Assembly: GCF_000143415.4 (NCBI RefSeq)
Contig: NW_003314284.1
Span: forward strand, 912,693-976,692
DNA length: 64,000 nt
Reading direction: 5' to 3'
From: Selaginella moellendorffii
Lineage: Eukaryota > Plantae > Lycopodiophyta
Shown here: piece after piece, positions 2,831 through 54,635 of the stretch
How the letters are laid out: every line of letters begins with the position of its first letter
How positions within the stretch are numbered: the stretch's first letter is position 1
Translations under genes and position numbers: made by a program
The notes under the pieces: model-generated
Databases searched by the model: none
The model's input: only the letters and a program-made list of their open reading frames with translations
What the model was told of the DNA's origin: nothing

Positions 2831-3533
2831 ACTCCACCACCCATAGACGAAGTTCGATGTCCTTATCGAATGATAAACTATTTTATAAAGTAATACCAAC
2901 TTGTATTACCCTTTGCATCCTTGGCCCCTCGCTAACATTCATCCATGGTTTAACACCAAAGGCTCACCTTGCCTTACCCATCCTATAAGGAGCATAGTCT
3001 CTCAAACTTAAAGATTCATTCGACCACTTGTGGTGGTTCTCTCCTTTTATTAGTTTAGTTCTCGCTAAACCTGTTAGAGACACCTTCTCTAAAGCTCTAT
3101 TTTGTTAAAGTGGGAATTGTCATTATCCCACTTGTAAAATAAGGTTTCCAAACCTTTATATAGTATATAAATATAACAAAATTCAACTACATTAAGGCAC
3201 ATACAATTTTATTTTAAATAAGGAAATGTCTACTCAATCACTTCTCCTCCCCCTGCCATTGCTTCACCTCTCTCTTCTCCTTGTCATCGTCGTCCAATTT
3301 CTTTTCATCCTTTTAATATTGGCTCAGTTGCTCCGAGTCTAGGTGGAGCCCAAGTCCTCATTCAATCTTTACTTTCCCCTTATTAATAAAACAACTTCGT
3401 AGACTTCCAATAACATGCTGTAACACTTCTAGTATAATGCAAATCCTCTCAAAGAATTGTCTTTTAATATTAATACAATGGCATGGAACCCCATGCCATA
3501 ATAAGTTACATTTTTAAATAAATACATGCTATC

Positions 3534-6500
3534 TCAGACTGTTATTTTTTGCCTCCAACGCCTATACAATAATCTTGGAATTTCATCACTCTCCACACTA
3601 TCAGGATTTAAACCCAATAGTAATGCCATCTCTTCTCTAATACGTCCACGCTCATGTTCAGTGGTCGAAGAACCCATCTGGTTGAGCAGATTATGGAGAT
3701 GCGGATAGTGTTTGGCTAGACAATATACATGCCATAAATGATGACTGGTGTCTGTCCGATCAAATGACTTCTGATATACTGTTCCATCTGCCATTTGGTT
3801 GATTTTTGCAGCCACCTCTTGGATTGGCTGGTTCTCTATCACCATCGCTCCAAGCCGTTTTGCAAGGTCCCCCAGAACATACGGTTTCTTTTCCCTAGTT
3901 TCCATACTGCAAGAGATGGGGTGCACTGCATATGTGTGCGTGTTCGCTGCAATTTTAATCGGCGAGTCATTGATGATGAGGATTTCACTTGACCTAGCAG
4001 TCCGGTTCATCACTACAGCCTCTGGCTTGACGAAGATGGGCTTGCTACCCCTCACATGGACCATAGTCAAGCAATCCTCCTACGTTAGGAGAAAGTCAAA
4101 TGGTAATATTACTCGCGTCTGATCGTGCATCATCTGTAGCAACGTTAATGCATTGTGGCGCATCATGGATGTCCAAACTCCCAATTGCAAATTGAACCCG
4201 GCCCTCTGTTTTAAGTGTCGCATGGTCATTATTAGATCCCGCAGTTTCTCCCGTGTGATTAATGTGAATCTGTCTCTTTTGACCAACTTGCGACCGCAGG
4301 CTTTGGAGGGTGCAGTGACATTCGAGGACGAGCCACGCTCATAAGAGAAAAGGACACCGTTCAGATAAAAAACGATACAGTACCTTCGCCGTGACTCTGA
4401 AATGAAATGCGTCAGCATAAAAAATGGTACAAGTCAATTTTACCATCTACAATATTAGCGAATGGTGCTCCCGATGGTCGTTGAGAGGGTTTTGGTCGAG
4501 GAAACGTGAAGGGCGGAAATACTCTCCTCTGCAATGTGGGGTCAATCGCATCCGATGGCGTGTGGGCACATGCCATTTCAGCTGTAGACTCTGGTACAAC
4601 TGGCTCAACAGTGGCATGGGGTGGTTCCGATGGCGTGTGATCACACGCCATTTCAGCTGGTGCCTCCGTTTGCAAAGTGGACATGACCGAACAGGCAGCA
4701 GGGGCGGTGTAGGGAGGTTCCAACGGCGCGTAGTCAGACGATTGGGCACACGTTGAGTCCGTTGGAAATGAGGATACGACCGGCTCGGCGGCTGGGGCGG
4801 CCTCATGCGGGTCCAATGGCGCCTGGTCACCGTCAGTTGGATACGTGGACAAGATTGACTCAGTGGTATGGGCAGCATCAAGTGGAGCGTGGTCAGCTTG
4901 CTTGGCGTTGATATGGATAGTAGCCTCCACCAGCTCTGATGACCTCTCGCATTTTTGGATCTAGTGACAGGGAAGTGCTGTCACAAAGGGGGCCAGTGGC
5001 GGATGGCCGAGTTGGTTTGCTCGCGGAGGGGATCCCACATGGTTCTTGCTTCAGGGCTAGTCCTTTGAGGAGGTTTGCGGAGGCTTGCAAGTCTTGTGAT
5101 TGTCGCGATGCTGGCAACGGGGGCTCGTATATCATTGAAGGGGGCCAGCGCACTTGTCTAGTGTGGGAGGCAAGGTAGCACGCTCTAGTCTAGAGCTGGA
5201 GGAGGCTCACACCTTGCTTGTTCTACGCCTTGGAGTTTGTTCGCAATGGGCACCGACTTAGTGCTGGAAGTACACTGGGGAGGTAGGCGCTCCAAGACAC
5301 AGCATCACGTCTTGGGGCGTAACAGGTGGCTTCAGCTTGTGCAGTGGAATCACCTTGGAGGCGAGTGACCCATGAGCGACGCCGGGTCATCGTGCTCGAG
5401 TTGGACTGCTTGGCTGCGACGACGTCGAGCTAGATCAACATGGTGTTCGTCCGGCTTGACATCATTGTGACCGAGTGGAGGAGTGGCGAGGCGAAGCAGG
5501 TGGCTTCAAGCTCCGCGGTGGAGTCACCTGGGAGGTGGACGGCCCAAGAGCAGCGCCGGGCGTTCGCGCTCATAGTTTCACTAGTTTCTTCGAGAGTGCG
5601 CTCTCAATGTTGTTTTGATCCCTTTGGGATTGGGGTAATGTACATATATGTTTAGCTGATGACTCTTGCAGGCAAGTAGAGTCCACTGGCGGATCCATAT
5701 GCATGTCCAAATATCTCCCTTCGATTGAGATGGTATCCTCCCTACTGGCTACTAAAAACAAACTCATTAGCACATTGAATCGACTATACTGTATTTACCA
5801 TCAACTGCTATTGAGGAACTAGGACCGATATCACTTGGGCGCACTGTTGATTGTGAAGGATTGGACATACGTTTCGACCCTTGCTTGGCACTATCCTTCC
5901 TCGACATTAAAGGCTAGAGTTTGTATCTTAATTTAACTGAATAATCTCTACTTACCATTTGCTTTGCAACCTACATGGACAATGTTAGAAATGGTAAAAG
6001 GTTAGGAATGGATGTACTATTATTTACCTGATGGTTTGTCTTGTATGACCTTCTTCCGCTGCTCTTTGGCCACCTCAGGCTGGCCATCGTCGTCATCATC
6101 GTCGTCGTCGTTATTGTGATCGTCACCATTGTGAGGACCATCCAAGTCCTCTTCGTCCTTCTCTTCTTCGTCTTCCTCTTCTTCGTCCTCCTCTTCTTTG
6201 TCCTCCTCTTCGTCCTTCTGCTCTTCCTGTTCATTATCTTTCTCTGGCTCCTCATCCCCCTCCTGCATTTCTTCCATAGGCTGCTCAGGCTGGATGGCTT
6301 GTTCTTCCAGGACCATCTTGGGAAAATCATCTGGCCGAGTCTCCATCTCAAAATACAAGACATCCATAGCCTGTTTCAGTGCTTGACCTAGGACCGTATC
6401 CTCACCCGACTGTCTTAACATGGTTTCTGCACGTTCTTGCACCCTTCGAAGACGACGAGATGAGAAAAACGTGGCCTTGACTTGAAAAGCATCCCTCATC

Positions 6501-9500
6501 CATTGTACCTCTCCATTGAGATTGGGGAAGGGGAGTCCACCATAGGAATCTGAGTCAGGAGGTGGTGACTGGCTGCTTTCACTCAGCCCTTGATCTGCAA
6601 TGAATGGCATGAGCACACACGCCATAACCACGAGGCATTACCTATCATCTTTTCGTTGCCCTTCTTCCTTTTCAAATCAAACGCCTCTGATCCCGACGAC
6701 TGTCCAACGTGCTTTCGCTTTTTATGACCACTGTCAGTTTGAGCTTGGCTGGTGCTTGCCTGTTTTGCCTTTGAAGAAGTGTCTCCTGCAAGGAATGGCA
6801 TGAGACCACACGCCATTGCAAATATAATTTGTACCTCCTTTTTTCCTATTGCTTGTCTGTTTGTCCTTCTTCGATGCGCCACCAGTGCGCTTTTCAGTCC
6901 TCGTCTCTGAATATTCACAACGATCTATAATCAAAATGGCATGAGGCCTCACGTGACCTTACCTTGTGCAGGTTGTGAGCTCGGCCCAACATGGGTATCT
7001 TCAATAGTAGCTGTTAACGCCGTTTCAGCATCTGGGGGTGGCCACGCTCCTGCATACAGAGCTTGTGAGATAACATTTAAACTTAAAGTGCGTACTCACC
7101 AGGTTCGCAGAGAAGATACTGTTTTTCTTTGGCAACTGTAATTATATGCTCCATTGAAGTCACCTCTTCAATGGAGTTTGTCACCGCAACACACGGGACA
7201 CCCTTGAGTAGTGCGGCTCGAAAGAATAGTCCACCGCAGTTGTACTCGACAACGCATTTGCCCTTGGAGTCGGAAGCAGGTGACCCACCCGCTATTGCGT
7301 TGAAGACCCAGCTGAGCATTTCCCATGCTGCACCTGGAGCTTTCTTTGGATTCGAAAGCTCCATAGCCGTCTTTAGTTCCTCAGGCACGGGCAAATTGAC
7401 CTCCCTCAGATCAATTCGATCGGCCTTGTCGAACGAAGTTGGGAAGTCACTCCAGTCCCACTCTGTTGCAGGACCAATAACAAGGGCGAGTGTGAAGATG
7501 CGGACATTCGTCGGTATCTTCTTCTTAGCCATTATCCCATGGATCTCCCGCATCTCCATGCCTTTCAACCGAGCCTTCACCTCGTTCAAGGCCTTCCAGA
7601 ACTTGTGATAGGATTCGGAGTCGTAGATCATATAGTGGACTGAGGATTCCACCTCCACAAGTCCCACCATTAAGTCAATGATGGAGCTGACTTCGTCTGC
7701 ATGAGTGATCTCCTCGTTTGTGAAGTCCATCACACAAAAGATGTTCTTGACCTGCTCATCTCTGCGGGAAACAATGCTCCTCCACCTTTGATCCTCATCC
7801 GAATTCACGTATACCCGATAAGGTTCTCGATAGGCCTCTGCTGCGGGGTCGAGCTGTTTCTGAAGCCGGCGGTCGACATCCCTCTTAATGAAATTTGGAT
7901 ACTGATCCAACTTCTCAGCTTTACTTTTCGTGGCATCCCGCAGCAGATCGATGAACTTGGGGGCCCCCTTCACGTACTCGTCGATGTCTTCATTTGACAA
8001 CTCCAGCGCTTCCATCATCTCTTGCGTGGTGTCGATGCTCACCCTCTCCACGGCCACTTGCTCGAAGATCCAATCCTTCAATAGCGCACGAGCTCTCAGA
8101 GTCGTGCACAAGTCCTCGTATGTCACAATATGGCCGGGAGTCATTTTGGTCTTGTTGAAGACTACCTCACCACGTAGAAGAGCATTAGCCACTGTCAGAA
8201 AGTCGTCGTCGTCTAGAGACCACGAGAAACGCAAGGCGTTGAGCTTCAAATCATTGGGCTTCCGGCCGTCCTCCACACCCATTGAGTTTAGCAACTCCCT
8301 GTCATGGTACCTCCTCAGCACATCTACCCATTTGTCAAAAACAACTTTTGTCGCGAGTAGAATGTTATGGATGCTGAGTGTGTCATTGACCCCCAGTGTT
8401 TTCGAGAGAAGACTCGAGAATTCCTGCAATGGAAATGGCGTGAGGCCACATGCTATGCCACATGCAACGAGGCTTACCTCCCAGGCGCTAGTTGCTAGTG
8501 CACGTCCTTGTCCTGGTTTTTGTGGCTTCTTTAGTTGAACCCAGAGCTTCCGTGTTCGTGCCAATGTCTCGTGCAGACCCGATTTGTAGCACATTTCTTG
8601 CTTGACATTCTGTGCGTGGGAGATATATATGATAGATCGGAGGGGCGAGTTGCCTTTTATCAGGCGGACAACTCTTGTCTTGAAGACTTTCTTCACCTCC
8701 TCGCCCACCATAATATCCACAACTATCTCTTGCATCGCCAAGCTAGAATGCTGCCCGGAGACGGCATAGAACTGGATGTTCTGATCGTCCAACACCTTCC
8801 TATTGATCAAGTCTGGAAACCTCGTCTCGCCCTTCATTGTTCGGTAGTAGGGGATCACGTCTGCGATGTCGGGTGTTACTGGACTTGCCAGCATCTTCTG
8901 CTTCAGTTTTTCCACCCACTCATCAGATACTAGCCTGTGGTTGTATTTGCTTTGGATGTCGATACGGCTCACGTCGATTGTATATACTTTGTTGGAATAG
9001 TAACAAGTACTATTATCTGCGACGATTTTTGCTACCTCTTCTTGCTCTTTCTGCTCTTTGCGGCTCTTCTTTTTGGTGGGTGTAGTGTTCGAACCCGAGG
9101 CAATGGCATCACCGAGTAGCTTCTTTTTTGGACCAGGAGAGTCGGACGTCGGCTTGAGCTTGACCACCCTTTTCTACTTCGGGGTAGTTTCCAGATCGAC
9201 CCCCTTCCCCTTCGCTTCGCGAACTGGAGGCACTCTCAACGGCTCAATGTTGGAATATAGTTTTTGAACATCGCTGTAGGTGAGGTCCGTGGATTCCATG
9301 TGATCTTCATAGACCCGCAGCGTCTTTGAAATTGTGGGCCTCTTGGACAACCTCTCCCTAGCTCCCTCTAGGAATTCCTCATAGCCGCTGCCCCCCTCCG
9401 GGAAGCCACTAGGATGTGCAAGGTGGATCTTGAAGGCGGACGCTGTCTCTACCACAAGTGCCAGTCCATATTCTTGCATGGAACTGCATGGAGTGTCTAT

Positions 9501-9677
9501 CACTTGGATGAAGATCCCCATGCATTCTTTTCTCCTACCATCTGTGTTGTACAGCCTCAGATTCTCACCTTCCATCCCGAAAGTCCAACTGGTGAGCTCC
9601 TCCCCCTTCTCTGCATCCACATTGACAGTGGCTGGAAGAAGAACGCAATTCCTCGCCTGTTCAGAAATGCACAACAA
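3534..9677 (-). pseudogene. Cargo gene of transposon copy 1: multi-exon ParB-like / degenerate MTase-like / acidic linker / FCP1-like HAD phosphatase fusion
   Basis: ORFs 9174-9677, 7083-9167, 6020-6631, 4412-4930, 4080-4418 and 3534-4070 join in frame through short GT-AG introns. Lesions: TAG at 9174 and 4080, DLNG->YLNG, one lost splice acceptor, and a 712-bp insertion. Confidence 0.7.
4944..5655. mobile_element. 712-bp GC-rich insertion of unknown type in the copy 1 cargo gene
   Basis: Absent from copy 2, where the ORF reads through at ~50680. Flanked by the 8-bp direct repeat CTGATGAC (4936-4943, 5656-5663). Confidence 0.6.
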
Positions 9678-9811
9678 TTAGAGCTGACAGATGAAAAGCT
9701 AGCAGCTAGAAATAACGTGAGGCCACACGCCATTCACCACTGCATCAGATGTCTTGAGGCTGCATCCTAAGATGGCGTGAGGCTACACGCCATCTGAATG
9801 CTACTGAATTG

Positions 9812-9838
9812 CTAAACCCTAAACCCTAAACCCTAAAC
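9812..9838 (+). repeat. Short plant telomere-type array (telo-box), about (AAACCCT)3
   Basis: CTAAACCCTAAACCCTAAACCCTAAAC. A two-unit version lies at ~56034-56053 in copy 2, in the intergenic region between the divergent genes. Confidence 0.7.
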
Positions 9839-10695
9839 ATGTGGCAAATGCTGCGTGAAGAAAGATGCCCTTTCTGGGCAAATGCTGTAAGAGGCAGATG
9901 CTGAGCAGATGTATCTCAGGCTAGCGAAGGGGACAAACGAAAGCTAGCTATAAACATGACGGGATGCAAATAGATTACTAGGCTGGTCCTGTGAAAATCA
10001 AAAACCATAATTGAAAACATTGAAAATGCAAAAAGAAAGGTTTATAATTATTTTTGAATTTTAAGCAACCAAAGGAATGTAAGTAGGGCATGTGTTTGTA
10101 AGTTTAAAAATGCCTCAACCACTTAAATTCCCAAATAAATAAAGCTGTTTCTATTTTTGGTATAGGTAAACTTTATAGCGTGTGGGCTCATGCAATTTTA
10201 AACCCAAAAATGCACCAAAAAATGCTCGACTAGCATTATTCTTTGAATGGCGTGTGGCCTTATATTGCCATAAATGGACGTACACACACAACATAATTAT
10301 TCCTTTACACGGCGAATAATCTTGGCGCGGATCGCTGACATGGCATGGCAAAGTTTGAATCACTGACATGGCACAGCTGGATCGAGGCAAGGACATGATG
10401 TGACAAAGTTCAACCTCCGACAGCAAAGTCTAGAAGCTACTCAGTTTGAAATTTGTCAGAGGAATCATAAGATCTAGTTTGTTAGAGGATTTGATGTGAC
10501 GTTCAAGCGTGTGTTATTTTTGAATTCTCGAACTCATTCCTAGGTCTATCATTTTTGTGCGCCGTGTTCTTGGTTCCACTGAGCGCAGTGAGCGCTGCTT
10601 GTGTAAGCGGCGTTGTGAGCTGTGGTTTATGCGTCTACGAGCGGTTGCGGCATGCGAGCGCCATTGCGAGCGGCAGTTTATGCGAGTGGTAGTTT

Positions 10696-10770
10696 GTGCG
10701 AGCGGCGCTACGAGCAGTTGCGGTGTTGCGAGCGGCGCTACGAGTAGTTGTGGTGTTGCGAGCGGCACTG
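10696..10770 (+). repeat. 30-bp tandem repeat (TGCGAGCGGCGCTACGAGCAGTTGCGGTGT) upstream of the transposase
   Basis: About 2.5 units. Also present in copy 2 at ~56912-56985. Confidence 0.7.
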
Positions 10771-11132
10771 TCTTTGGTGTGGCTACCGCTTCCTCTTGAT
10801 ATTCGGCACTTGTGCTTCCTGGTATGTTCACCATGAAATGGCTTAGGACCACATTTAGAAATGGCATGAGGCCACATGCCATCTTGGGCCCTTGCAATTT
10901 CATGGCTAGCGTATTGTCATATATGTTTTTACTTACCTGTAGCTGTGTGTATATCAAGATGGCATGAGGCCTCATGCCAATTTTGTGAATGCGAAATTTC
11001 ACGTGGGTGTCAATAGCATGTTTGAATAATGGCATGTGGCCTCATGCTATTGAGGTTGTTTGGTATGTTATGATTTAGGCCATTCTCCAATCATTTTTTG
11101 TATGGTTTTAACTTCTTTTCTGCACTTTCAGA

Positions 11133-14100
11133 ATGGCCTTCAGGGTTGGGGAAAATGTTTACATTTTGAATGGTGGGAAGAGAGTTGCAAAAGGGACCCT
11201 TGTGTCTATGGATCGGAACTTTGTTATACACTGTCAAAGGCTTGGGGAAGGCAATGCTGCTGTATCAGTAGAGACTGTCTTCGATGGGAATGTGGTCGCT
11301 ATTGAACAAGGAGAGATGGTTGTCGGGGTAAATGTTGTTGTTGCCTTGAAAAATCTTCAGAAGAAAGCAGATGTTGGGGACAACGCAAGTGCGACGCATG
11401 TTCCCTCCGTGGATCTTAAGAACCGTGCTACATGGATTTAGGCAAAGGTGTTTCTAAACAACCCCGAGGGGGAGGTGGTAGCTGAGGGCTTAGCCATAGT
11501 TGTCGATCCAAGAGATGCGGTTGCTAATCAAGAATTGGGCTGGGATGATATTGGAGTTGCGATTTTAGAGGTTGTTGACACAGAAGAAAACAGTCTGACT
11601 ATTGGAAGCATTGTGCGGTGGAAATTGAGGCACTTAGTGTTTGAGAATGTGAAGGATTCACAATCAAACACCACTACAACTGATGACAGAACATCTCTTC
11701 ATGGGAAAAGAAAGTACACCTTCCTAAAGCGCAGCCAAAGGGATCTGAGCAACGAACCGAAAAGGCAGAAAATGGCGATGGAGGTTCGAATGGTCTCGAC
11801 AGTTGCTTGTTGCAAGAGGAGGTGCTGTCAACATGCTGATTGGGATGCTATTGAAGAGGAGAGAGCAAGATACAAGACATTGTCCTGGAAGGCAGCTTGC
11901 AATTTTGTGTATGAGGCATTACTGTCATCTGTTGATGCTTCAGAACATTAGGTGGGGGGCATGGTCTTCCAGAGGGGTTTGGTCTGCATGAAGGCATGGA
12001 GAATCATTTATGGAGTCCCTCGAACCACATTCTACAGAATCAAAACTGAGTTCGAGGAACAAAGGGTTCAACAGGCAGTCCATGGGAACGACGGTACGCA
12101 CAAAACCAGGGGTCATGTTGTATATGGAGAGGCAATCTTCAAGAGGTTTGTCGAGACATGTAGCGAGCAGCAACCACATAAAACCCGCCTCTTGGAAGAT
12201 GGAACATGAGACACCCAACGAGTTCTCCCTTCCATGTATACCAAGGGGGCCATATTGGAAGATGTGAATCGGGAACTCCAGAGTAATGGCTACAGGAAGC
12301 TGAGCCAATCTAGATTTAGTAGATTGTGGAGCAACAGGTTCAGGGATGTGAGTATAGGAAAGTACTCCAGCTTTTCAAAGTGTGACGAGTGCACTGCTAT
12401 CAAAATGGCTTTGTCGAAGAATTCTTGCAGCGCTCAAGAGCGAGAGATGTTGGTTAGAAGGCGGCTCGACCACAACATCGAGCAGAGAAGCTGCAGGACT
12501 GCATATTATCATAACAGGATTCTCTCCATGGAGAGACCTGACTCTTACCTCTGCATCATCCACGACAAAATGGACCAGAAAAAGATGTGCTTACCTCGAC
12601 TCAATCCTGCCCCCAAGGCAATCTCTTCATCCATGCAGCTGCCTGTGTCTCTGTTTGGCATAATCGCTCATGGGCATAGTGCCCAGAACTATGGGAACTT
12701 CTTTGTACCTCTATGGGGTGGTGGGGGTGCAAACATGATGATTGCGTCCCTAGCAAAACACTTAAGGTCTCTACAAAGTGCGCAGACTGAGCTGAACGGC
12801 CAACCCTTGCATAAGGCCCTTGTCGATCAAACCCCATACAGGGTTCAGCTGGAGGAGGAGCAAAGGCTTGCAGTATCGCGTGGGGCCCCATGCCATCCCA
12901 GTGAATATGTTGGCCGTCAGATTGTAGGGTTATCACGTGAGGCCTCATGCCATTCCGACAAGGCTGGTCGCCCGGTGAATGCACAGCCTCATCCAAACGA
13001 AGCAGAATCTCAAGGAAGTTCTTGCGGCTGATGTGGCCTTCCACCCCATCTTCTGCTCCAAACAGACAATGCTGGCAGTGAGAACAAAAACATGTACGTC
13101 TTCGCGTACTTGGCGATGCTTGTTGCCAAAGGCATATTTGAAACGGTTACACTTGGCTTTCTCATGGTTGGGCACACTCATGAAGACGTCGATGCCATGT
13201 TCAGTCACCTGGCAGAGTCCCTCCGGCGATCCAATGTTCTCACCCTCCCACAACTCTACGATGAATTCCAAAATTGCATCAAAGGCACTGTTGAAGTTGC
13301 ACTTGTGACAGAGGTTCCAGACTTTAAGGGGTTTGTAAGAGGCTACATCAGGGATGGATCCGAAACGCTGATTGGCCACTCCAAGCCTCTTCAGTTTCAT
13401 TTCAGCATGTGTGACGGTGCTCCAGTGATGAGGTACAAGATGAGAGAATGGGACACAGTGTGGCTGCCAGTGGACGGCATTGAACTCTTCAAGAGAGATC
13501 CCATAACTGGGGAACCTATGATTCCTCAGGGTTCCCCACGGCCGATGCACTCGGATGGACTCAAAGACCAGGAAAGTATAGTGGCCGGGATTAGATAGCA
13601 TATTGCCTTCTGGAAGAGGGGGTTGGTGTTTGGTGGAGAATCCTATTTTCAGAGGTGCAAGCCTTTGCTCGAATACTGGGAGAAGATTATATCTGCTATC
13701 CAAAATGGGCCGGTTGTATATGAAGAATTGGAAGAGTCCTTTTGGCCAGAACCCAGAGCACCAGATAGTAGCGGAACAATGTCCTCTGGAAATGCAGTGA
13801 CAGATAACGATGTTGAGGATCACTATTGTGGGCCGAGGAACAAGAAGCCGGATTCAGCATTCAATCCAGTACAAGTCTGCAAAGGAATGGTCGTGCTTGT
13901 CAGACCTAGTAATAAAAAACAAATGATATGGGTGGGGCGTTGCATCATTGATGCAGAGGAGGACGCGGAAACTAACTCCTTCAATGTAACTATGGAGTGG
14001 TTCAAGCCAAGTTCCGGATATACGAAGGATTGCCTAGAAAAGAGATGGGTGCTGAATCCAAGGGATCCCAGCATGAGCATATCGGTGGATAATGTTGTGC

Positions 14101-14201
14101 ATGGTTGGATGCGGAAGCAGAGTGCCACCATCACCTTGCCAGACCATGCAAGAGATGCAGCAAGAGCATTCATAACCCGGGTTCAAGGTGAGATTCATTA
14201 A
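11133..14201 (+). pseudogene. Transposase of copy 1 (~1022 codons; Sola-like DDD, DUF7869-type motifs), broken by 5 in-frame stops
   Basis: ORFs 11133, 11448, 11952, 12234, 13092 and 13623 are all in one frame. Motifs VCMKAWRIIYGV, FSKCDEC, IIHDKMDQ, LLQTDNAGSENKN and FLMVGHTHEDVDAMFS. Four of the stops are sense codons in copy 2. Confidence 0.85.
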
Positions 14202-17200
14202 TATTCCTTTACTAAGTTTCTAATGTATTTTATTTCAAGGTGAACAATCCGAATCTGAATCAGAGGAGGCGTGATGGCATGTGGCCTTACGCCATTCCTA
14301 GGTGAGATGATACAAATAACAAGTATAAATTCTTAGTTGTTCTTGCAAATCTTACTTAAAGTTCAAGGTGAACAAGCCGAATATGAATTCATCGGATTGT
14401 TATAACAAATTGCGAGGTGATGGCATGAGGCGATACGCCATTTGAGAGTGGTAGCCATTCCTATATGAGGTGAATGAAATATTTATTAAAAATACCTCAT
14501 TCAATTGTGCACTTCTAAGTCTTGGTCCACTCAGTACTGTTTGCATGTTTCTATTTTAATTCTTTCTCTAAAATGTTATTTAGCATGTGGCTTCATGCCA
14601 TTGCTCTCCACAATCATGCATTGAATTTTTCTATCCTTGCATAATACTTCTCCATATATATAGCATGTGCGCACATGTGATATGGTTCATTAAGCCTGAT
14701 ATAGTGTGTGAGGTAAAACAAAGATGATGTGACATATGCATTTACCAATCACACGTGCATAAATCTAATAATATGGCGTGTGGCCCATATTAATGGCACA
14801 TAAACCCATATTGTGGGCTTATGTGCTTTATGTACCATCATTCCCTTGCAGCGTGTGTGTTGGTTTCCTTTTATAACACAACGAACTCCATATTTTAGGG
14901 TGAAGAGCGTTCTCATGGCAAGCACAAAATCTGTAAGTGAGGCAGAAAAGGAGACGGAGAAGGAGATAGGTGAAGATGTAGAATATATAAGTCTTCCAAA
15001 CTCCCCGTACTATACTCCAGGTGATCATTTTTCTGAACAAACGGCAATATTAACAACTATCGAGAACGCCCCAGTAACGTCAGAGACAACAATCCAAAGC
15101 AAAACAACTGACCCAGAGAAGGATGATAGTACCGCTGAGAGTACCAAAAAGGAGGTGTCCACTAGCGCTTAGGCTTATAATGGCGTGTGCCCTCATGCCA
15201 TTTACTTGATCACCAAATACCTTTTTCCCTTTGCACTAGTATATCTTAATACCGGTCTGAGAAATAGAATGGCATGTGCCCTCAGGCCTTTTACTAAATC
15301 ACCTTTGAAAGAAATGCAAGCCTCTATGTCGTAAAAAAAAGGTACTAGAGAAATTCCTTAATAATTTGAATGTTATTTAGTTTCATGAAAATACACTAAG
15401 GGTCAAATGAGTTAAATGACTTCTCCAGACTAGCAATGCCTCTTGCTACACCTTCACAATTAGATTCGTTAGAAAAAGATAACATTGAATAATATCTAAA
15501 TGTTCTCACCATTAAGTTATATGTCTGGCTAATAGGAATGATGTTCATCTTGGAAAGCTCACCACACGCTCAATGAACAAACAAATAGTGTGTGCGCGCA
15601 TGCCATCGCTCTTCTTTAGCTTCAGATTCGGCTTGTTCACCTTGACAATGAGATTTATTATACAACCAGATGGACTCAGTCTGGACACAAAGTCACCGCG
15701 CTAGTCACCATGCCCCAGATATGTCTAGCCCCTAGACAAAAAACATATAATTTCACATCATTTTCAAATACTTGAAAATTTGTATCTAGTCCCATTTTAC
15801 TGAATAAATCCCATTTTAACGAAATGGAGCTTTCTAACCCAATCCCACTACTTATTCTCGAGTAGTCTTAATTTCCATCGATATAACCCTTGCACTTTGG
15901 AACCTTTTAATTCTGACTTCTCGAAGTCAATTCCCTAAGTGTCTTTGACACCTTGCATTGCACATATTGTGCAACTCCATTTCCTCATCCTAGGAAGTTC
16001 TCTATTTGAGGGCACCATCATCCTCTCTTCAATTTCATGCCACCTTTGGCACTAAGTTCTAGTTATCATATTTTGTGCTAAGGCTGTCCACGGCCCTATC
16101 ATTTGGCTACCTTACCGCTCCCACCCTTGGAGTTTCCGCTTTCACCAAATCGGAGCAATTGGGAATCCATCCTTGGGAACACATTGCCTTTCCCATAATC
16201 CGTTAACCCCCAACACCTTTTTGTTTTTAGCCTAACTTTGCCATTTGGATTTTTTTTTTTTTTTTTCCATGATTCCCATGGCTCTTTACTTAGCCACAGC
16301 CTTTTGCTCTTATCCTTGATTGTTGCACCCAGCAACATAGGATCGCTACTTCCATTTTCGAGATATCGTTTTGGTTCCATAGCAAAGACTCTCCTTTGCC
16401 ATGTTCATCCCTAGTATGTCTTTTTAGCATCTTCTGCTATGGGCTCTATCCACGGCCCAACTTTGTGACCCTCCCATGGGTCTTTTATAGAGACTACTTT
16501 CCTCGAACTCACTATGCCATTGCATTGACATATCTTATTTCCCTTAGGTGTCTTTCTCACTTGGTCACCTTGACCAAGCCATACCATCATCAATAGTTTC
16601 AATTTACACTTTGAACTTGGAACTTTATCCCTTAACCTCACAAAGACTTTATCCTTGTTTTGGCCACAAGATCACCTAGTGATTTAACCTTGGCACCTTA
16701 ATAAGTTTGCCAATAGGTACTAGGTCTTCTAGACCTTTGAGTTGTTCACCATGACTCCGGGGGCATCTCCCACATTTGGCGGTGCACCCAAGCCAGCCCA
16801 TCTGGCCAAGGGTCTATAGCAACTGAGACTGGGTATCCCCATCTCATTCACCACATCCTTAGTGCCACTTGCACCAAAGTGTTCAAGTTAGATATGCTAA
16901 GCTTTCACACTAAGCAATCTAACTGTGCATCACAACTCCGAGGCATCCTTCGCTTGGCGGTGTGCCCAAACCAGTCTCCCCACTGAGAGTCCATGACCAC
17001 CAAAATATGAGTGTCCTCATATTCCAAACCATCACCACGCCCTAGTGAGTTGGGACTCGAACCCAAGCACTAGAGGGTCGGGACTCGAACCCAACCTCCG
17101 TATATGCATCTACGGACGGCATCATACAAGATGCCTGGCGTGACTCCCCACGCCGGTGCACCATCATACCCTTAAAGCGAGTTACAGATCACAGCTTAGG

Positions 17201-35900: not shown

Positions 35901-35945
35901 ATCACACAAAGTTGAAATTCAGCACCGCCTATCACCCACAGACAG

Positions 35946-48854: not shown

Positions 48855-49285
48855 AAGCTCTATTTCGTTAAAGTGGGAATTGTCATTATCCCACTTGTAA
48901 AATAAGGTTTCCAAACCTTTATATAGTATATAAATATAACAAAATTCAACTGCATTGAGGCACATGCCATTTTATTTTAAACAAGGAAATGTCTACTCAA
49001 TCACTTCTCACTGCTTCACCTCTCTCTTCTCCTTGTCATTGTCGTCCAATTTCTTTCCATCCTTTTAATATTGGCTCAGTTGCTCCGAGTCTAGGTGGAG
49101 CCCAAGTCCCCATTCAATCTTTACTTTCCCCTTATTAATAAAACAACTTCGTAGACTTCCAATAACATGCTGTAACACTTCTAGTATAATGCAAATCCTC
49201 TCAAAGAATTGTCTTTTAATATTAATACAATGGCATGGAACCCCATGCCATAATAAGTTACATTTTTAAATAAATACATGCCATC

Positions 49286-50148
49286 TCAGACTGTTATTTT
49301 TTGCCTCCAACGCCTATACAATAATCTTGGAATTTCATCACTCTCCACACTATCAGGATTTAAACCCAATAGTAATGCCATCTCTTCTCTAATACGTCCA
49401 CGCTCATGTTCAGTGGTCGAAGAACCCATCCGGTTGAGCAGCTTATGGAGATGCGGATAGTGCTTGGCTAGACAATATACATGCCATAAATGATGACTGG
49501 TGTCTGTCCGATCAAATGGCTTCTGATATACCGTTCCATCTGCCATTTGGTTGATTTCTGCAGCCACCTCCTGGACTGGCCGATTCTCTATCACCATCGC
49601 TTCAAGCCGTTTTGCAAGGTCCCCCAGAACATACGGTTTCTTCTCCCTAGTTTCCATACTGCAAGAGATGGGGTGCACTGCATATGTGTGCGTGTTCGCT
49701 GCAGTTTTAATCGGCGAGTCATCGATGATGAGGATTTCACTTGACCTAGCAGTCCGGTTCATCACTACAGCCTCTGGCTTGACGAAGATGGGCTTGCTAC
49801 CCCTCACATGGACCATAGTCAAGCAATCCTCCTGCGTTAGGAGAAAGTCAAATGGTAATATTACTCGCGTCTGATCGTGCATCATCTGTAGCAACGTTAA
49901 TGCATTGTGGCGCATCATGGATGTCCAAACTCCCAATTGCAAATTGAACCCGGCCCTCTGTTTTAAGTGTCGCATGGTCATTATTAGATCCCACAGTTTC
50001 TCCCGTGTGATTAATGTGAATCTGTCTCTTTTGACCAACTTGCGACCGCAGGCTTTGGAGGGTGCAGTGACATTCGAGGACGAGCCACGCTCATGGGAGA
50101 AAAGGACACCGTTCAGATCAAAAACGATACAGTACCTTCGCCGTGACT
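49286..50148 (-). CDS. Last exon of the cargo gene: FCP1/SCP (NIF)-like HAD phosphatase domain, intact in copy 2
   Basis: Motif I CIVFDLNGVL, motif II LGVWTSMM, motif III FVKP, motif IV LIIDDSPIK..N. Confidence 0.75.
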
Positions 50149-53100
50149 CTGAAATGAAATGCGTCAGCATAAAAAATGGTACAAGTCAATTTTACCATCT
50201 ACAATATTAGTGAATGGTGCTCCCAATGGTCGTTCAGAGGGTTTTGGTCGAGGAAACGTGAAGGGCGGAAATACTCTCCTCTGCAATGTGGGGTCAATCG
50301 CATCCGATGGCGTGTGGGCACATGCCATTTCAGCTGTAGACTCTGGTACAACTGGCTCAACAGTGGCATGGGGTGGTTCCGATGGCGTGTGATCACACGC
50401 CATTTCAGCTGGTGCCTCCGTTGGCAAAGTGGACATGACCGAACAGGCAGCAGGGGTGGTGTAGGGAGGTTCCAACGGCGCGTAGTCAGACGATTGGGCA
50501 CACGTTGGAAATGAGGATACGACCGGCTCGGCGGCTGGGGCGGCCTCATGCGGGTCCAATGGCGCCTGGTCACCGTCAGTTGGATACGTGGACAAGATTG
50601 ACTCAGTGGTATGGGCAGCATCAAGTGGAGCGTGGTCAGCTTGCTTGGCGTTGATATGGATAGTAGCCTCCACCAGCTCTGATGACTCTTGCAGGCAAGT
50701 AGAGTCCACTGGCGGATCCATATGCATGTCCAAATATCTCCCTTCGATTGAGATGGTATCCTCCCGTGCTACTAAAAACAAACTCATTAGCACATTGAAT
50801 CGACTATACTGTATTTACCATCAACTGCTATTGAGGAACTAGGACCGATATCACTTGGGCGCACTGCTGATTCTGAAGGATTGGACATACGTTTCGACCC
50901 TTGCTTGGCACTATCCTTCCTCGACACTAAAGGCTAGAGTTTGTATCTTAATTCAACTGAATAATCTCTACTTACCATTTCTTCTGCGACCTACATGGAC
51001 AATGTTAGAAATGGTAAAAGGTTAGGAATGGATGTACTATTATTTACCTGATGGTTTGTCTTGTATGACCTTCCTCCGCTGCTCTTTGGCCACCTCAGGC
51101 TGGCCATCATCGTCATCATCGTCATCGTCGTTATTGTGATCGTCACCATTGTGAGGACCATCCAAGTCCTCTTCGTCCTCCTCTTCTTCGTCCTCCTCTT
51201 CTTCGTCCTCCTCTTCGTCCTTCTGCTCTTCCTGCTCATTATCTTTCTCTGGCTCCTCATCCCCCTCTTGCATTTCTTCCATAGGCTGCTCAGGCTGGAT
51301 TGCTTGTTTTTCCAGGACCATCTTGGAAAAATCATCTGGCCGAGTCTCCATCTCAAAATACAAGACATCCATAGCCTATTTTAGTGCGTGACCTAGGACC
51401 GTATCCTCACCCGACTGTCTTAACATGGTTTCTGCACGTTCTTGCACCCTTCGAAGACGACGAGATGAGAAAAACGTGGCCCTGACTTGAAAAGCATCCC
51501 TCATCCATTGTACCTCTCCATTGAGATTGGGGAAGGGGAGTCCGCCATAGGAATCTGAGTCAGAAGGTGGTGACTGGCTCCTTTCACTCAGCCCTTGATC
51601 TGCAATGAATGGCATGAGCCCCTACGTCATAACCGCGAGGCATTACCTATCATCTTTCGATTCAAACGCCTCTGATCCCGACGACTGTCCAACGTGCTTT
51701 CGCTTTTTATGACCACTGTCAGTTTGAGCTTGGCTGGTGCTTGCCTGTTTTGCCTTTGAAGAAGTGTCTCCTGCAAGGAATGGCATGAGACCACACGCCA
51801 TTGCAAATATAATTTGTACCTCCTTTTTTCCTATTGCTTGTCTGTTTGTCCTTCTTCGACGCGCCACCAGTGCGCTTTTCAGTCCTCGTGTCTGAATATT
51901 CACAACGATCTATAATCAAAATGGCGTGAGGCCTCACGTGACCTTACCTTGTGCAGGTTGTGACCTCGGCCTAACATCAGTAGCTGTTAACGCCGTTTCA
52001 GCATCTGGGGGTGGCCACGCTCCTGCATACAGAGCTTGTGAGATAACATTTAAACTTAAAGTGCGTACTCACCAGGTTCGCAGAGAAGATACTGTTTTTC
52101 TTTGGCAACTGTAATTATATGCTCCATTGAAGTCACCTCTTCAATGGAGTTTGTCACCGCAACACACGGGACACCCTTGAGTAGTGCGGCTCGAAAGAAT
52201 AGTCCGCCGCAGTTGTACTCGACAACGCATTTGCCCTTGGAGTCACCCGCTATTGCGTTGAAGACCTAGCTGAGCATTTCCCATGCTGCACCTGGAGCTT
52301 TCTTTGGATTCGAAAGCTCCATAGCCGTCTTCAGTTCCTCAGGCACGGGTAAATTGACCTCCCTCAGATCAATTCGATCGGCTTTGTTGAACGAAGCTGG
52401 GAAGTCACTCCAGTCCCACTCTGCTGCAGGACCAATAACAAGGGCGACTGTGAAGATGCGGACATTCGTCGGTATCTTCTTCTTAGCCATTATCCCATGG
52501 ATCTCCCGCATCTCCTTGCCTTTCAACCGAGCCTTCACCTCGTTCAAGGCCTTCCAGAACTTGTGATAGGATTCGGAGTCGTAGATCATATAGTGGACTG
52601 AAGATTCCACTTCCGCAAGTCCCACCATTAAGTCAATGATGGAGCTGACTTCGTCTGCATGAGTGATCTCCTCGTTTGTGAAGTCCATCACACAAAAGAT
52701 GTTCTTGACCTGCTCATCTCCGCGGGAAACGATGCTCCTCCACCTTTGATCCTCATCCGAATTCACGTATACCCGGTAAGGTTCTCGATAGGCCTCTGCT
52801 GCGGGGTCGAGCTGTTTCTGAAGCCGGCAGTCGACATCCCTCTTAATGAAATTTGGATACTGATCCAACTTCTCAGCTTTACTTTTCGTGGCATCCCGCA
52901 GCAGATCGATGAACTTGGGGGCCCCCTTCACGTACTCGTCGATGTCTTCATTTGACAAGTCCAGCTCTTCCATCATCTCTTGCGTGGTGTCGATGCTCAC
53001 CCTCGCCACGGCCACTTGCTCGAAGATCCAATCCTTCAATAGCGCACGAGCTCTCAGAGTCGTGCACAAGTCCTCGTATGTCACAATATGGCCGGGAGTC

Positions 53101-54635
53101 ATTTTGGTCTTGTTGAAGACTACCTCACCAAGTAGAAGAGCATTAGCCACTGTCAGAAGGTCGTCGTCGTCTAGAGACCGCGAGAAACGCAAGGCGTTGA
53201 GCTTCAAATCATTGGGCTTCCGGCCGTCCTCCACACCCATTGAGTTTAGCAACTCCCCGTCATGGTACCTCCTTAGCACATCTACCCATTTGTCAAAAAC
53301 AACTTTTGTCGCGAGTAGAATGTTATGGATGCTGAGTGTGTCATTGACCCCCAGTGTTTTCGAGAGAAGACTCGAGAATTCCTGCAATGGAAATGGCGTG
53401 AGGCCACATGCTATGCCACATGCAACGAGGCTTACCTGCCAGGCGCTAGTTGCTAGTGCACGTCCTTGTCCTGGTTTTTGTGGCTTCTTCAGTTGAACCC
53501 AGAGCTTCCGTGTTCGTGCCAATGTCTCGTGCAGACCCGATTTGTAGCACGTTTCTTGCTTGACATTCTGCGCGTGGGAGATGTATATGATAGATCGGAG
53601 GGGCGAGTTGCCTTTTATCAGGCGGACAACTCTTGTCTTGAAGACTTTCTTCACCTCCTCGCCCACCATAATATCCACAACTATCTCTTGCATCGCCAAG
53701 CTAGAATGCTGCCCGGAGACGGCATAGAACCGGATGTTCTGATCGTCCAATACCTTCCTATTGATCAAGTCTGGAAACCTCGTCTCGCCCTTCATTGTTC
53801 GGTAGTAGGGGATCACGTCTGCGATGTCGGGTGTTACTGGACTTGCCAGCATCTTCTGCTTCAGTTTCTCCACCCACTCATCAGATACTAGCCTGTGGTT
53901 GTATTTGCTTTGGATCTCGATACGGCTCACGTCGATTGTATATACTTTGTTGGAATAGTAACAAGTACTATTATCTGCGACGATTTTTGCTGCCTCTTCT
54001 TGCTCTTTCTGCTCTTTGCGGCTCTTCTTTTTGGTGGGTGTAGTGTTCGAACCCGAGGCAATGGCATCACCGAGTAGCTTCTTTTTTGGAGCAGCAGAGT
54101 CGGACGTCGGCTTGAGCTTGACCACCCTTTTCTGCTTCGGGGTAGTTTCCAGATCGACCCCCTTCCCCTTCGCTTCGCAAACTGGAGGCACTCTCAACGG
54201 CTCAATGTTGGAATATAGTTTTTGAACATCGCCGTAGGTGAGGTCCGTGGATTCCATGTGATCTTCATAGACCCGCAGCGTCTTTGAAATTGTGGGCCTC
54301 CTGGACAACCTCTCCCTAGCTCCCTCTAGGAATTCCTCATAGCCGCTGCCCCCCTCCGGGAAGCCGCTAGGATGTGCAAGGTGGATCTTGAAGGCGGACG
54401 CTGTCTCTACCACAAGTGCCAGTCCATATTCTTGCATGGAACTGCATGGAGTGTCTGTCACTTGGATGAGGATCCCCATGCATTCTTTTCTCCCACCATC
54501 TGTGTTGTACAGCATCAGATCCTCGCCTTCCATCCCGAAAGTCCAACTGGTGAGCTCCTCCCCCTTCTCTGCATCCACATTGACAGTGGCTGGAAGAAGA
54601 ACGCAATTCCTCGCCTGTTCAAAAATGCACAACAA
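49286..54635 (-). pseudogene. Cargo gene of transposon copy 2 (ParB-like / MTase-like / acidic / HAD)
   Basis: 789-aa ORF 52266-54635 plus downstream exons. Lesions differ from copy 1: TAG at 52266 and 51376, and a ~20-nt deletion near 51660. The first exon(s) are probably upstream or in the gap. Confidence 0.7.

What the first reader, a model, noticed from the sequence alone, without database searches (positions are those of the whole stretch)
3092..15832. Giant Sola-like DNA transposon carrying a putative chromatin/transcription-modifying cargo gene and its own dispersed palindromic sites
Seen: two independent insertions (3092-15832, 48855-61211) with 24-bp TIRs and different 4-bp TSDs (TCTA, TCAG), both supported by empty-site homologues in this window. 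Each has a DDD transposase, a divergent ~6-kb spliced gene, and the same 22-bp palindrome (about 23 copies counted in copy 1). Known: DN..ENKN / GH...D motifs with a 4-bp TSD fit the Sola superfamily, whose described members are generally compact and transposase-centred. Arabidopsis VANDAL elements encode VANC proteins that bind motifs dispersed in the element to counter silencing. Inference: this is a three-part system (transposase + ParB-like effector + cognate sites) that may let the element recognise itself and escape silencing. I do not recall such an element being described, but I cannot search.
Basis: partly seen in the sequence, partly recalled or inferred. Interest (0 to 1): 0.92.

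Follow-up and report, generated by a model that had tools for sequence, protein, structure and literature searches.

The report
Sola1 transposon with ParB-like accessory gene
Two decayed copies of a 12-13 kb plant (liverwort-type) cut-and-paste transposon carry, besides their transposase, a conserved gene for a ParB-like, methylase-like and phosphatase-like protein, plus about 20 copies of a private 22-bp palindrome that may be its binding sites. This looks like a self-recognition system, so far proposed only for red-algal transposons.

Summary
There are two insertions, 3092-15832 and 48855-61211, with 24-bp TIRs. Their 4-bp TSDs (TCTA, TCAG) are each verified against an uninterrupted paralogue in the window.

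The transposase hits Pfam DUF7869, and its catalytic blocks match Repbase Sola1-1_AP.

The divergent gene encodes three recognisable domains:
- a ParB/Srx-fold domain, supported by structure only (AlphaFold plus Foldseek, not by sequence);
- a beta-class N6/N4 DNA-methylase-like domain that lacks the DPPY motif;
- an FCP1/NIF phosphatase-like domain with DxNxV instead of DxDxT.

The palindrome ATGGCRTG-N6-CAYGCCAT occurs 22 and 19 times inside the two copies. In the other 39 kb there is one weak match.

The ParB-like and methylase-like pair recurs in all nine related loci examined: seven Riccia sorocarpa, one Calypogeia, one metagenome contig. In four Riccia loci it lies head-to-head with a DUF7869 transposase. 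Each lineage has its own dispersed palindrome. The cargo is therefore an old, stable component and not a recent capture.

Who binds the sites, and whether the effect is anti-silencing or self-repression, is untested. Both window copies carry nonsense mutations.

A 2025 preprint proposes the same logic for red-algal Plavaka elements. I therefore rate this a new variant of a known kind: land plants, Sola1, and a fused ParB-methylase-like-FCP1 protein.

The parts
3088..3091 (.). Copy 1 target-site duplication TCTA, left. The right copy is at 15833-15836.
   Evidence: The uninterrupted paralogue at about 40057 has the site once (TTTA).
3092..3115 (+). Copy 1 5' TIR, 24 bp. It contains the terminal motif TCCCACTTT on the minus strand.
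15809..15832 (-). Copy 1 3' TIR, 21/24 matches to the 5' TIR. A second TCCCATTTT lies at 15790.
3534..4433 (-). Copy 1 cargo gene, last coding block: FCP1/NIF phosphatase-like domain. It is broken by a stop at 4080-4082, and motif I reads FYLNG.
4415..4960 (-). Copy 1 cargo gene, Pro/Ala-rich open block, probably a disordered linker. It holds two palindromes (4555, 4630).
4936..5655 (.). A 720-bp stretch present in copy 1 only, flanked by the direct repeat CTGATGAC. It is either a nested insertion or a deletion in copy 2.
7101..9677 (-). Copy 1 cargo gene, main coding block with one stop at 9174-9176. It comprises an N-terminal domain, a Lys-rich stretch, the ParB/Srx-fold core (about 8469-9026, motif SGQHS at 8745-8759), a helical region and the methylase-like domain (MDFTN at 7716-7730, YNCGG at 7230-7244). 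It ends at a GT donor at 7099, followed by a 50-nt intron.
9678..11132 (.). Copy 1 region between the two divergent genes, with six palindromes (9712, 9772, 10175, 10861, 10959, 11029).
11133..14201 (+). Copy 1 Sola1-like transposase (DUF7869) in a single frame of 1022 codons, with 5 internal stops (11439, 11949, 12207, 13029, 13596). D1 is HDKMD at 12561-12575, D2 is DNAGSENKN at 13065-13091, and D3 is GHTHEDVD at 13170-13193.
14202..15808 (.). Copy 1 3' subterminal region with seven palindromes (14274-15585).
48855..61211 (+). Copy 2, the whole element, with TSD TCAG at 48851-48854 and 61212-61215 and perfect 24-bp TIRs. It is inserted in the reverse-transcriptase region of a Ty3/gypsy element. 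N gaps lie at 54902-55327, 57065-57258, 58934-59290 and 60192-60291.
49286..50170 (-). Copy 2 NIF/FCP1-like block, open. FDLNG is at 50108-50122 and IIDDSP at 49712-49729.
52074..54635 (-). Copy 2 cargo main block. It has one copy-specific nonsense codon, TAG at 52266-52268, where copy 1 has TGG. SGQHS is at 53703-53717, MDFTN at 52674-52688 and YNCGG at 52203-52217.
57329..58933 (+). Copy 2 transposase, open up to the N gap. The C-terminal part, 59476-60330, is also open. DDD motifs are at 58118-58132, 58622-58648 and 58727-58750.

Best explanation
This is a family of autonomous Sola1-type cut-and-paste DNA transposons from a liverwort-like genome.

Shown. The transposase (DDD, DUF7869) is paired with 24-bp TIRs and a terminal TCCCAYTTT motif, and insertion makes a 4-bp TSD. 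Head-to-head with the transposase lies one long spliced accessory gene. Its product joins a ParB/Srx-fold nucleotide-binding-type domain, a degenerate beta-class N6/N4 DNA-methylase-like domain without the catalytic DPPY, an acidic/Pro-rich linker, and an FCP1/SCP (NIF) phosphatase-like domain whose second catalytic Asp is replaced.

Inferred. The roughly 20 copies of the private palindrome (A)ATGGCRTG-N6-CAYGCCAT(T) cluster between the two promoters and in the subterminal regions. I take them to be the cis sites for a dimer of the accessory protein, as parS, NBS and OB sites are for ParB, Noc and KorB. Binding would mark the element's own DNA and bring the methylase-like and FCP1-like modules to it. 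They would then act on the transcription machinery (RNA polymerase CTD state) or on the chromatin of the element itself.

I lean to a benefit private to the element: keeping its two genes expressed, or shielding them from silencing. The direction is inferred, not shown. Both copies in this window are inactive relics.
For: Anatomy.

Sola1. Pfam DUF7869 scores 8e-39. The blocks HDKMD, TDNAGSENKN and FLMVGHTHEDVD compare with FDLEK, SDNCGGQNRN and FLERGHTQS of Sola1-1_AP.

ParB fold. The AF2 core has pLDDT 80-95. 48 of the top 50 PDB matches are ParB, Noc, KorB, PadC, sulfiredoxin, SbnI or related ParB-like proteins; the best is Noc 7ol9 at 1.3e-4. There are 24 BFVD hits at <=1e-3, including phage ParB and ParB-methylase fusions.

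Methylase-like domain. Family profiles hit M.RsrI at 1.4e-5 and 1.9e-6, on the HPTQKP..VLDFFAGSG block. Riccia paralogues are named 'DNA methylase N-4/N-6 domain-containing' by UniRef.

NIF. Pfam scores 24.9 bits against a cut-off of 21.8, and 7e-11 in Riccia.

Sites. 36 matches against 0 expected, and none at <=2 mismatches outside the copies.
- The arms vary only as CG or CATG, 25 to 1 against the other CpG decay product.
- Mixed arms give A-C mismatches on one strand or the other, which argues against an RNA hairpin.
- The terminal motif TCCCAYTTT is different and is confined to the ends.

Conservation.
- A ParB-like domain followed by a methylase-like domain on one strand is seen in L003, L004, L005, L007 and L009-L012.
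- NIF lies downstream in L003, L010 and L012, with weaker hits in L004 and L011.
- A transposase lies divergent to the ParB-like gene in L003, L006, L007 and L011.
- Private palindromes occur in every ParB-bearing locus, 3 to 54 copies each, and none in the animal transposase-only locus L008.
- Motif relatedness tracks ParB-core relatedness.

Selection. dN/dS for the ParB core between copies is 0.22, and for the whole cargo 0.58 against 0.53 for the transposase.
Against: No binding data exist.

The ParB assignment is by fold only. Neither Pfam nor a PDB profile search finds ParB by sequence. The arginine-rich GERR-type motif is replaced by an invariant SGQHS. No helix-turn-helix could be modelled with confidence (pLDDT about 50 beyond the core).

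Motif and ParB relatedness could simply reflect whole-element descent.

L002 has palindrome arrays next to its transposase, and no ParB-like domain was found in the part of that contig I could read.

The methylase-like and NIF-like domains lack canonical catalytic residues, so the effector chemistry is unclear.

Promoter tethering of a real CTD phosphatase represses transcription in Arabidopsis.
Confidence: 0.45

Rival explanations
1. The palindromes are transposase-binding or transpososome-assembly sites, like the subterminal repeats of Ac/Ds, En/Spm or Mutator. The accessory protein would do something unrelated to them, for example nucleotide-dependent help in integration.
For: Many DNA transposons carry repeated transposase-binding motifs. 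Seven to eight sites lie in each subterminal region. L002 shows arrays flanking the transposase with no ParB-like domain in the 18 kb that I hold.
Against: The TIR and its TCCCAYTTT repeats bear no resemblance to the palindrome. Sites are also dense between the promoters and inside the cargo gene. L004, L005 and L010 carry the ParB-like gene and palindromes, with no transposase within the DNA held. The Tubulanus DUF7869 locus has neither an accessory gene nor dispersed palindromes. The L002 minus-strand gene, which runs off the locus, begins right after an eight-copy array and has the N-terminal layout of the accessory proteins. This last point rests on layout only, with no significant similarity.
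Confidence: 0.2
2. The same binding model, but the accessory protein is a KorB-like autorepressor or copy-number control. Bound at its operators, it would dampen transcription of both element genes through the FCP1-like module, and private sites would avoid cross-talk between families.
For: KorB is a ParB-family global repressor with dispersed palindromic operators, and KorB structures are among the fold matches. Sites are promoter-proximal for both genes. CPL2 fused to a zinc finger represses its targets by Pol II Ser5 dephosphorylation (PMC10027610).
Against: The NIF-like domain lacks the second catalytic Asp: DLN in the window, DVE in Riccia. A large accessory gene kept across deeply diverged families, with more than 100 paralogues in Riccia, is easier to explain by a direct benefit to proliferation. 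Sites in gene bodies and at the 3' end are not needed for promoter repression.
Confidence: 0.2
3. The cargo gene is a captured host gene or a chance neighbour, and the palindromes are a short repeat that merely spread inside this element.
For: Neither window copy has an intact cargo gene. dN/dS between the copies is only moderately below 1, at 0.58.
Against: The same three-domain order, orientation relative to a DUF7869 transposase, and presence of private palindromes recur in Riccia, Calypogeia and metagenome contigs at 19-30% ParB-core identity. There are more than 100 diversified paralogues in one genome. The transposase shows the same dN/dS.
Confidence: 0.03

Closest known systems
Sola1 group of the Sola superfamily (Repbase; Bao, Jurka and Kapitonov 2009)
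   Same: The three catalytic blocks match those of Sola1-1_AP as printed in the supplement of PMC3985635. The element also has a 4-bp TSD, TIRs and a single-exon transposase.
   Different: The size is 12.4-12.7 kb, with a second, larger conserved gene and about 20 internal palindromes. That described Sola elements are compact and encode only a transposase is my recollection, not something I could check here.
Red-algal Plavaka, Zisupton and Mutator elements with the PAG cassette (bioRxiv 10.1101/2025.02.11.637652)
   Same: These are giant DNA transposons with a ParB-like accessory protein (PAG3) next to arrays of inverted repeats, and an accessory protein with a PF01555 DNA-methylase domain (PAG2). 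The authors propose that the element binds and modifies itself.
   Different: The transposase superfamily and the host lineage (land plants) differ. Here ParB-like and methylase-like domains sit in one protein, with an FCP1/NIF-like C-terminus instead of 2OG-oxygenase or SET domains. The palindromes are dispersed over the whole element as well as clustered. My whole-library phmmer search returned 17 proteins; the named ones, apart from low-complexity matches, were land-plant proteins, and none was red-algal.
VANDAL21 / VANC anti-silencing system of Arabidopsis
   Same: An accessory protein plus family-specific short motifs accumulated in the element, with different motifs in related families of one genome.
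   Different: There is no evidence of homology. The superfamily (Mutator) differs. VANC function is experimentally shown, and nothing is shown here.
Bacterial and plasmid ParB/parS, Noc/NBS and KorB/OB systems, and phage ParB-N6_N4 methylase fusions (PMC12704722)
   Same: The ParB/Srx fold, palindromic cis sites in many copies on the same replicon, and fusion of the ParB fold to a PF01555-type methylase domain as in phages.
   Different: The setting is eukaryotic. SGQHS replaces the GERR arginine motif. The methylase motif IV is lost. An FCP1-like domain is added. No ParA partner is present.

Membership tests
Sola superfamily, Sola1 group | RNase H-like DDD core with the Sola1 sequence blocks | tested here: met
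   The window has HDKMD, TDNAGSENKN and FLMVGHTHEDVD. Sola1-1_AP has FDLEK, SDNCGGQNRN and FLERGHTQS. Sola2-1_HM (DGCAGQYKN, SHG) and Sola3-1_HM (SDNASSYHGN) fit worse. The comparison is at motif level by eye, not a scored alignment.
Sola superfamily, Sola1 group | 4-bp target-site duplication and terminal inverted repeats | tested here: met
   TCTA and TCAG, each verified against an uninterrupted paralogue, and 24-bp TIRs.
Sola superfamily, Sola1 group | Phylogenetic placement among Repbase Sola1, Sola2 and Sola3 transposases | not testable with these tools
Only the core fragments in the supplement of PMC3985635 could be read.
ParB/Srx (ParB-CTPase fold) superfamily | The fold of the N-terminal domain | tested here: met
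   The AF2 core has pLDDT 80-95. 48 of the top 50 PDB hits are ParB, Noc, KorB, PadC, Srx, SbnI or related ParB-like proteins, with probabilities of 0.82-1.00. BFVD gives 24 hits at <=1e-3.
ParB/Srx (ParB-CTPase fold) superfamily | A sequence-profile match to ParBc or relatives | tested here: not met
   No Pfam hit at E<=10 for the ORF or at E<=1 for 8 family members. The profile search against PDB finds no ParB.
ParB/Srx (ParB-CTPase fold) superfamily | Arginine-rich nucleotide-binding motif (GERRxRA-type) | tested here: not met
   The invariant motif in the family is (F)xA(I/V)SGQHS. It resembles the DGQHR/DGQQR variants by my recollection. Nucleotide binding is untested.
ParB/Srx (ParB-CTPase fold) superfamily | A DNA-binding helix-turn-helix after the N-domain, with binding to palindromic sites in cis | tested here: inconclusive
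   Palindromes are present in cis. The region after the core is helical but modelled at pLDDT about 50. Binding cannot be tested here.
Beta-class N6/N4 DNA methyltransferase (PF01555) | C-terminal HPxxKP ... FxGSG (motif I) block | tested here: met
   Family profiles A4 and A6 hit M.RsrI at 1.4e-5 and 1.9e-6 on that block. A Riccia ORF gives a weak Pfam hit at 1e-3, below the cut-off. The window copy is the most degenerate (VVEYNCGGLFFRAAL).
Beta-class N6/N4 DNA methyltransferase (PF01555) | Catalytic (D/N/S)PP(Y/F/W) motif IV | tested here: not met
   No such motif is found in the right place in any locus then held, L001-L008. The window has CVMDFTNEE and Riccia has VFLDVTHPN.
Beta-class N6/N4 DNA methyltransferase (PF01555) | The methyltransferase fold | tested here: inconclusive
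   The AF2 model of the window segment has mean pLDDT 51. Foldseek finds nothing significant, with CcrM at rank 15 and E 0.27.
FCP1/SCP (NIF) phosphatases | A Pfam NIF match above the gathering score | tested here: met
   24.9 bits against 21.8 for copy 2, and 42.5 bits for Riccia L003.
FCP1/SCP (NIF) phosphatases | The DxDx(T/V) catalytic motif | tested here: not met
   Copy 2 has FDLNGV and copy 1 has FYLNGV. The aligned Riccia paralogues mostly have LDVEGL, with variants such as DIEG and DFEG. The first Asp is kept and the second is not.
VANC-type sequence-specific anti-silencing | An accessory protein that binds element-specific motifs and causes loss of DNA methylation | not testable with these tools
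   Only the motif pattern can be seen. There are no methylation, expression or binding data. Homology to VANC was not tested.
Red-algal PAG cassette | Sequence homology to PAG2/PAG3, and a 2OG-oxygenase or SET effector | tested here: not met
   The phmmer search of 1.84 billion representatives gave 17 hits; of the 10 looked up, the named ones were land-plant proteins apart from a low-complexity yeast match, and none was red-algal. There are no SET or 2OG Pfam hits. The resemblance is in architecture and logic.

The most novel reading that the evidence does not exclude
This is a eukaryotic ParB-parS system. The accessory protein would load as a nucleotide-dependent clamp at the element's private palindromes and spread over the transposon. 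Using its degenerate methylase-like and FCP1-like modules, it would capture or reprogram RNA polymerase II, IV or V CTD state. Only copies carrying the matching sites would then escape silencing. Protein and site specificities would co-diversify between families living in one genome.
Probability: 0.2. Interest if true: 0.9.

Novelty: new variant of a known kind. Interest (0 to 1): 0.7.

Why it matters
If the accessory protein does bind the palindromes, these elements would be a second, independent case in plants of a transposon that recognises its own DNA, after VANDAL/VANC. It would be built from parts of bacterial or phage type: a ParB fold fused to a PF01555-like domain.

It would also link the red-algal PAG observation to land plants. 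That would suggest ParB-plus-methylase modules are a recurrent tool of giant eukaryotic DNA transposons.

The private, easily recognised sites make direct tests possible, such as DAP-seq or reporter assays in Marchantia.

The several co-resident families in Riccia, each with a different motif, offer a natural experiment on how specificity evolves.

Tried and rejected
- The search for homologous proteins with the 789-aa cargo ORF found nothing. The exhaustive phmmer search gave only weak hits.
- Pfam and PDB sequence searches of the ParB-like part were blank.
- The metagenome scan failed. A3 was too divergent to give a pattern. A5 gave 66 pattern matches, none confirmed.
- The AF2 model of the window's methylase-like segment was too poor for a fold search.
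- A search for a canonical DPPY motif in the cargo genes of the loci then held (L001-L008) found only chance hits elsewhere.
- I could not read Bao et al. 2009 or Yuan and Wessler 2011. One literature search was wasted on the term 'Zator'.
- RNA-hairpin reading of the palindromes: rejected, because arm variants are one-sided and give A-C mismatches on either strand.
- Recent host-gene capture: rejected on the Riccia and Calypogeia evidence.
- The source organism was not identified. The only near-identical relative is a Logan contig of run ERR10900155.
Full report
**Observation.** The two elements are real and their limits are exact.
- Copy 1 runs 3092-15832, flanked by TCTA on both sides. Copy 2 runs 48855-61211, flanked by TCAG.
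- The termini are a 24-bp inverted repeat, perfect in copy 2 and 21/24 in copy 1.
- When the flanks of each copy are joined with one TSD, they align across the junction with an uninterrupted paralogue in the same window. Copy 1 aligns with 39663-40654 (82.5%), and copy 2 with 34847-33873 (92.7%).
- Copy 2 sits inside the reverse-transcriptase region of a Ty3/gypsy element, whose intact paralogue lies at 31678-38405.
- The copies differ by 3.0% over 10.3 kb, 73% of it transitions, plus several indels. Copy 2 has four assembly gaps.
- A third copy, 97% identical, internally deleted and with its own flank, is in a Logan contig of run ERR10900155.

**Transposase.** On the plus strand, copy 1 has one 1022-codon frame (11133-14201) with five in-frame stops. 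The readable parts of copy 2 are open.
- Pfam places it in DUF7869 at 8e-39.
- Homologues occur at about 40% identity in ENA metagenome contigs. At 25-30% they occur in the liverworts Riccia sorocarpa and Calypogeia fissa, and more distantly in a nemertean, Chromera and Ectocarpus.
- The three catalytic blocks (HDKMD, TDNAGSENKN, FLMVGHTHEDVD) match those of Repbase Sola1-1_AP as printed in the supplement of PMC3985635 (FDLEK, SDNCGGQNRN, FLERGHTQS). They match Sola2 or Sola3 less well.
- With the 4-bp TSD, this supports a Sola1 assignment. A tree with Repbase sequences could not be made.

**Cargo gene.** It lies on the minus strand, head-to-head with the transposase, and is spliced.
- One 50-nt GT-AG intron is evident at 7050-7099, and at least one more follows.
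- Copy 1 has a stop at 9174-9176 and another in the last block. Copy 2 has a single copy-specific TAG at 52266-52268 where copy 1 has TGG.
- ParB-like domain: an AlphaFold model of residues 181-610, built on a small family alignment, has a confident core (pLDDT 80-95). 48 of its top 50 PDB matches are ParB, Noc, KorB, PadC, sulfiredoxin or related ParB-like proteins. In the viral library the top matches are phage ParB proteins, including ParB-methylase fusions.
- By sequence alone nothing links it to ParB. The family's invariant motif is SGQHS, not the arginine-rich ParB motif.
- Methylase-like domain: downstream, family profiles hit the beta-class N6-adenine methylase M.RsrI at 1.4e-5 and 1.9e-6, exactly on the HPTQKP..VLDFFAGSG block. 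UniRef names several Riccia paralogues as N-4/N-6 DNA methylase domain proteins.
- The catalytic DPPY motif is absent in every locus then held (L001-L008). A model of the window's own segment was too poor to confirm the fold.
- Phosphatase-like domain: the last block is an FCP1/NIF phosphatase-like domain, above Pfam's cut-off. It keeps the first Asp and the DD of motif IV but has N at the second catalytic Asp, where most aligned Riccia paralogues have E.

**Palindromes.** ATGGCRTG-N6-CAYGCCAT occurs 36 times at <=2 mismatches, all inside the two copies, against none in shuffles.
- My scan at <=3 mismatches gives 22 in copy 1, 19 in copy 2, and one weak match in the other 39 kb.
- In copy 1, six sites lie in the 1.45 kb between the two genes and seven in the 3' subterminal region. 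The rest lie in introns or low-complexity stretches of the two genes.
- Each arm holds a CpG. Where it has changed, it is almost always to the variant that keeps CATG (25 to 1). The two arms vary independently, giving A-C mismatches on one strand or the other.
- That pattern suits a double-stranded protein site with one degenerate position better than an RNA hairpin.
- The termini carry a different repeat, TCCCAYTTT. Six of its seven occurrences in the window lie within 45 bp of an element end.

**Relatives.** This is the strongest evidence on the nature of the cargo.
- In nine related loci, a ParB-like domain is followed on the same strand by the methylase-like domain. These are seven Riccia sorocarpa loci, one Calypogeia fissa locus and one ENA contig. 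In L006 only the edge of the ParB-like domain is held, so the methylase-like domain could be checked in eight of the nine.
- A NIF-like domain follows in L003, L010 and L012, with weaker hits in L004 and L011.
- A DUF7869 transposase lies divergent to it in four Riccia loci: L003, L006, L007 and L011.
- ParB-core identity to the window is only 19-30%.
- Riccia holds more than 100 diversified paralogues of the methylase-like/FCP1 gene.
- Every one of these loci has its own dispersed palindrome. These include TCGGGAYGCRTCCCGA (34 copies in L003) and GGAAAAGTAAGGAC-N4-GTCCTTACTTTTCC (54 in L007). The others are GGAAATGTTGGNAC-N4-GTNCCAACATTTCC (L006), GGYTTCCGGAARCC (L010), GCCTCGAGA-N3-TCTCGAGGC (Calypogeia) and CAACGC-N-GCGTTG (ENA).
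- Shuffles give at most two copies of any such palindrome. Each motif is confined to its own lineage.
- Loci with 59-90% identical ParB cores share a motif, with the partial exception of L010. The pair at 48% has related motifs, and those at or below 35% have unrelated ones.
- An animal DUF7869 locus has neither an accessory gene nor dispersed palindromes.
- This fits co-diversification of a protein and its sites. It would also follow from descent of whole elements, so it does not tell which protein binds.
- Between the two window copies, dN/dS is 0.58 for the cargo (0.22 for the ParB core) and 0.53 for the transposase. The cargo is no less constrained than the transposase.

**Mechanism.** The anatomy is shown. 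The function is inferred.
- I think the palindromes are most likely the cis sites of the accessory protein, by analogy with ParB, Noc and KorB.
- Binding would bring the degenerate methylase-like and FCP1-like modules to the element's own DNA. They would then act on its transcription or chromatin.
- Tethering the CTD phosphatase CPL2 to plant promoters represses them (PMC10027610). But the element's NIF-like domain lacks a catalytic residue and may bind rather than dephosphorylate.
- The main rival is that the palindromes serve the transposase. The separate terminal motif speaks against it, as do the palindrome-bearing loci that have the accessory gene but no transposase. One transposase locus with arrays and no detected ParB-like domain (L002) speaks for it. 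There, however, a gene with the layout of an accessory N-terminus starts right after an array and runs off the DNA I hold.

**Novelty.** The idea is not wholly new.
- A 2025 preprint on the red alga Bostrychia describes giant Plavaka elements, and also Zisupton, Mutator and Fanzor-linked elements. They carry a ParB-like plus 2OG-oxygenase accessory gene next to inverted-repeat arrays, and a PF01555 methylase plus SET accessory gene. The authors suggest the element binds and modifies itself.
- A 2025 survey notes that ParB folds are often fused to N6/N4 methylases in phages.
- I found no description of the present arrangement: Sola1 transposase, land plants, one fused ParB-methylase-like-FCP1-like protein, and dispersed private palindromes. 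The Riccia genome paper does not mention it, and 'DUF7869' occurs in no paper of the library.
- I therefore rate it a new variant of a known kind.

Noticed in passing
window 4936-5655: A 720-bp stretch is present in copy 1 but not in copy 2, bounded by the direct repeat CTGATGAC. It is either a nested insertion with an 8-bp TSD or a microhomology deletion in copy 2. It has an internal 82-bp repeat.
   Followed up: partly
window 54902-55327, 57065-57258, 58934-59290, 60192-60291: All four N gaps of the window lie inside copy 2. Next to two of them, copy 1 has about 660 bp that copy 2 lacks. The true length and state of copy 2 are therefore uncertain.
   Followed up: partly
L001 (Logan ERR10900155 contig) 1-3577: A third copy, 97% identical, joins position 13265 of the element directly to 15699 (an internal deletion). 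It also lacks an in-frame 243 bp at the start of the transposase, and it has a different flank.
   Followed up: partly
window 21900-22460, 25560-26030, 41130-41570, 39390-39600: There are arrays of a diverged short tandem repeat inside several retrotransposon-like paralogues. They give dozens of offset self-matches.
   Followed up: no
window 11133-11441: The first 100 residues of the transposase give a weak Pfam match, below the cut-off, to the TNP1/En-Spm family (Transposase_23, E 0.002). The accessory proteins also begin with a beta-rich domain preceded by a W-x-[LF]-x-M motif.
   Followed up: no
L006 8183-15860: Two DUF7869 transposase genes lie in tandem in Riccia. Each is associated with a different palindrome family: GGAAATGTTGG... 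upstream, and TCGGGAYGCRTCCCGA within and after the second. The two elements are probably adjacent or nested.
   Followed up: partly
P0051, P0053, P0060 (Selaginella moellendorffii D8RBM5 and others): Proteins of about 450 aa match only the helical middle part of the cargo protein (residues about 370-600), without the ParB core. They may be fragments, a separate gene, or a domesticated piece.
   Followed up: no
L002 930-1303 and 9273-9466: Tandem arrays, with a period of about 50 bp, of a 24-bp palindrome lie immediately upstream of the transposase and of a divergent gene about 9 kb away. The layout looks like an operator array.
   Followed up: partly
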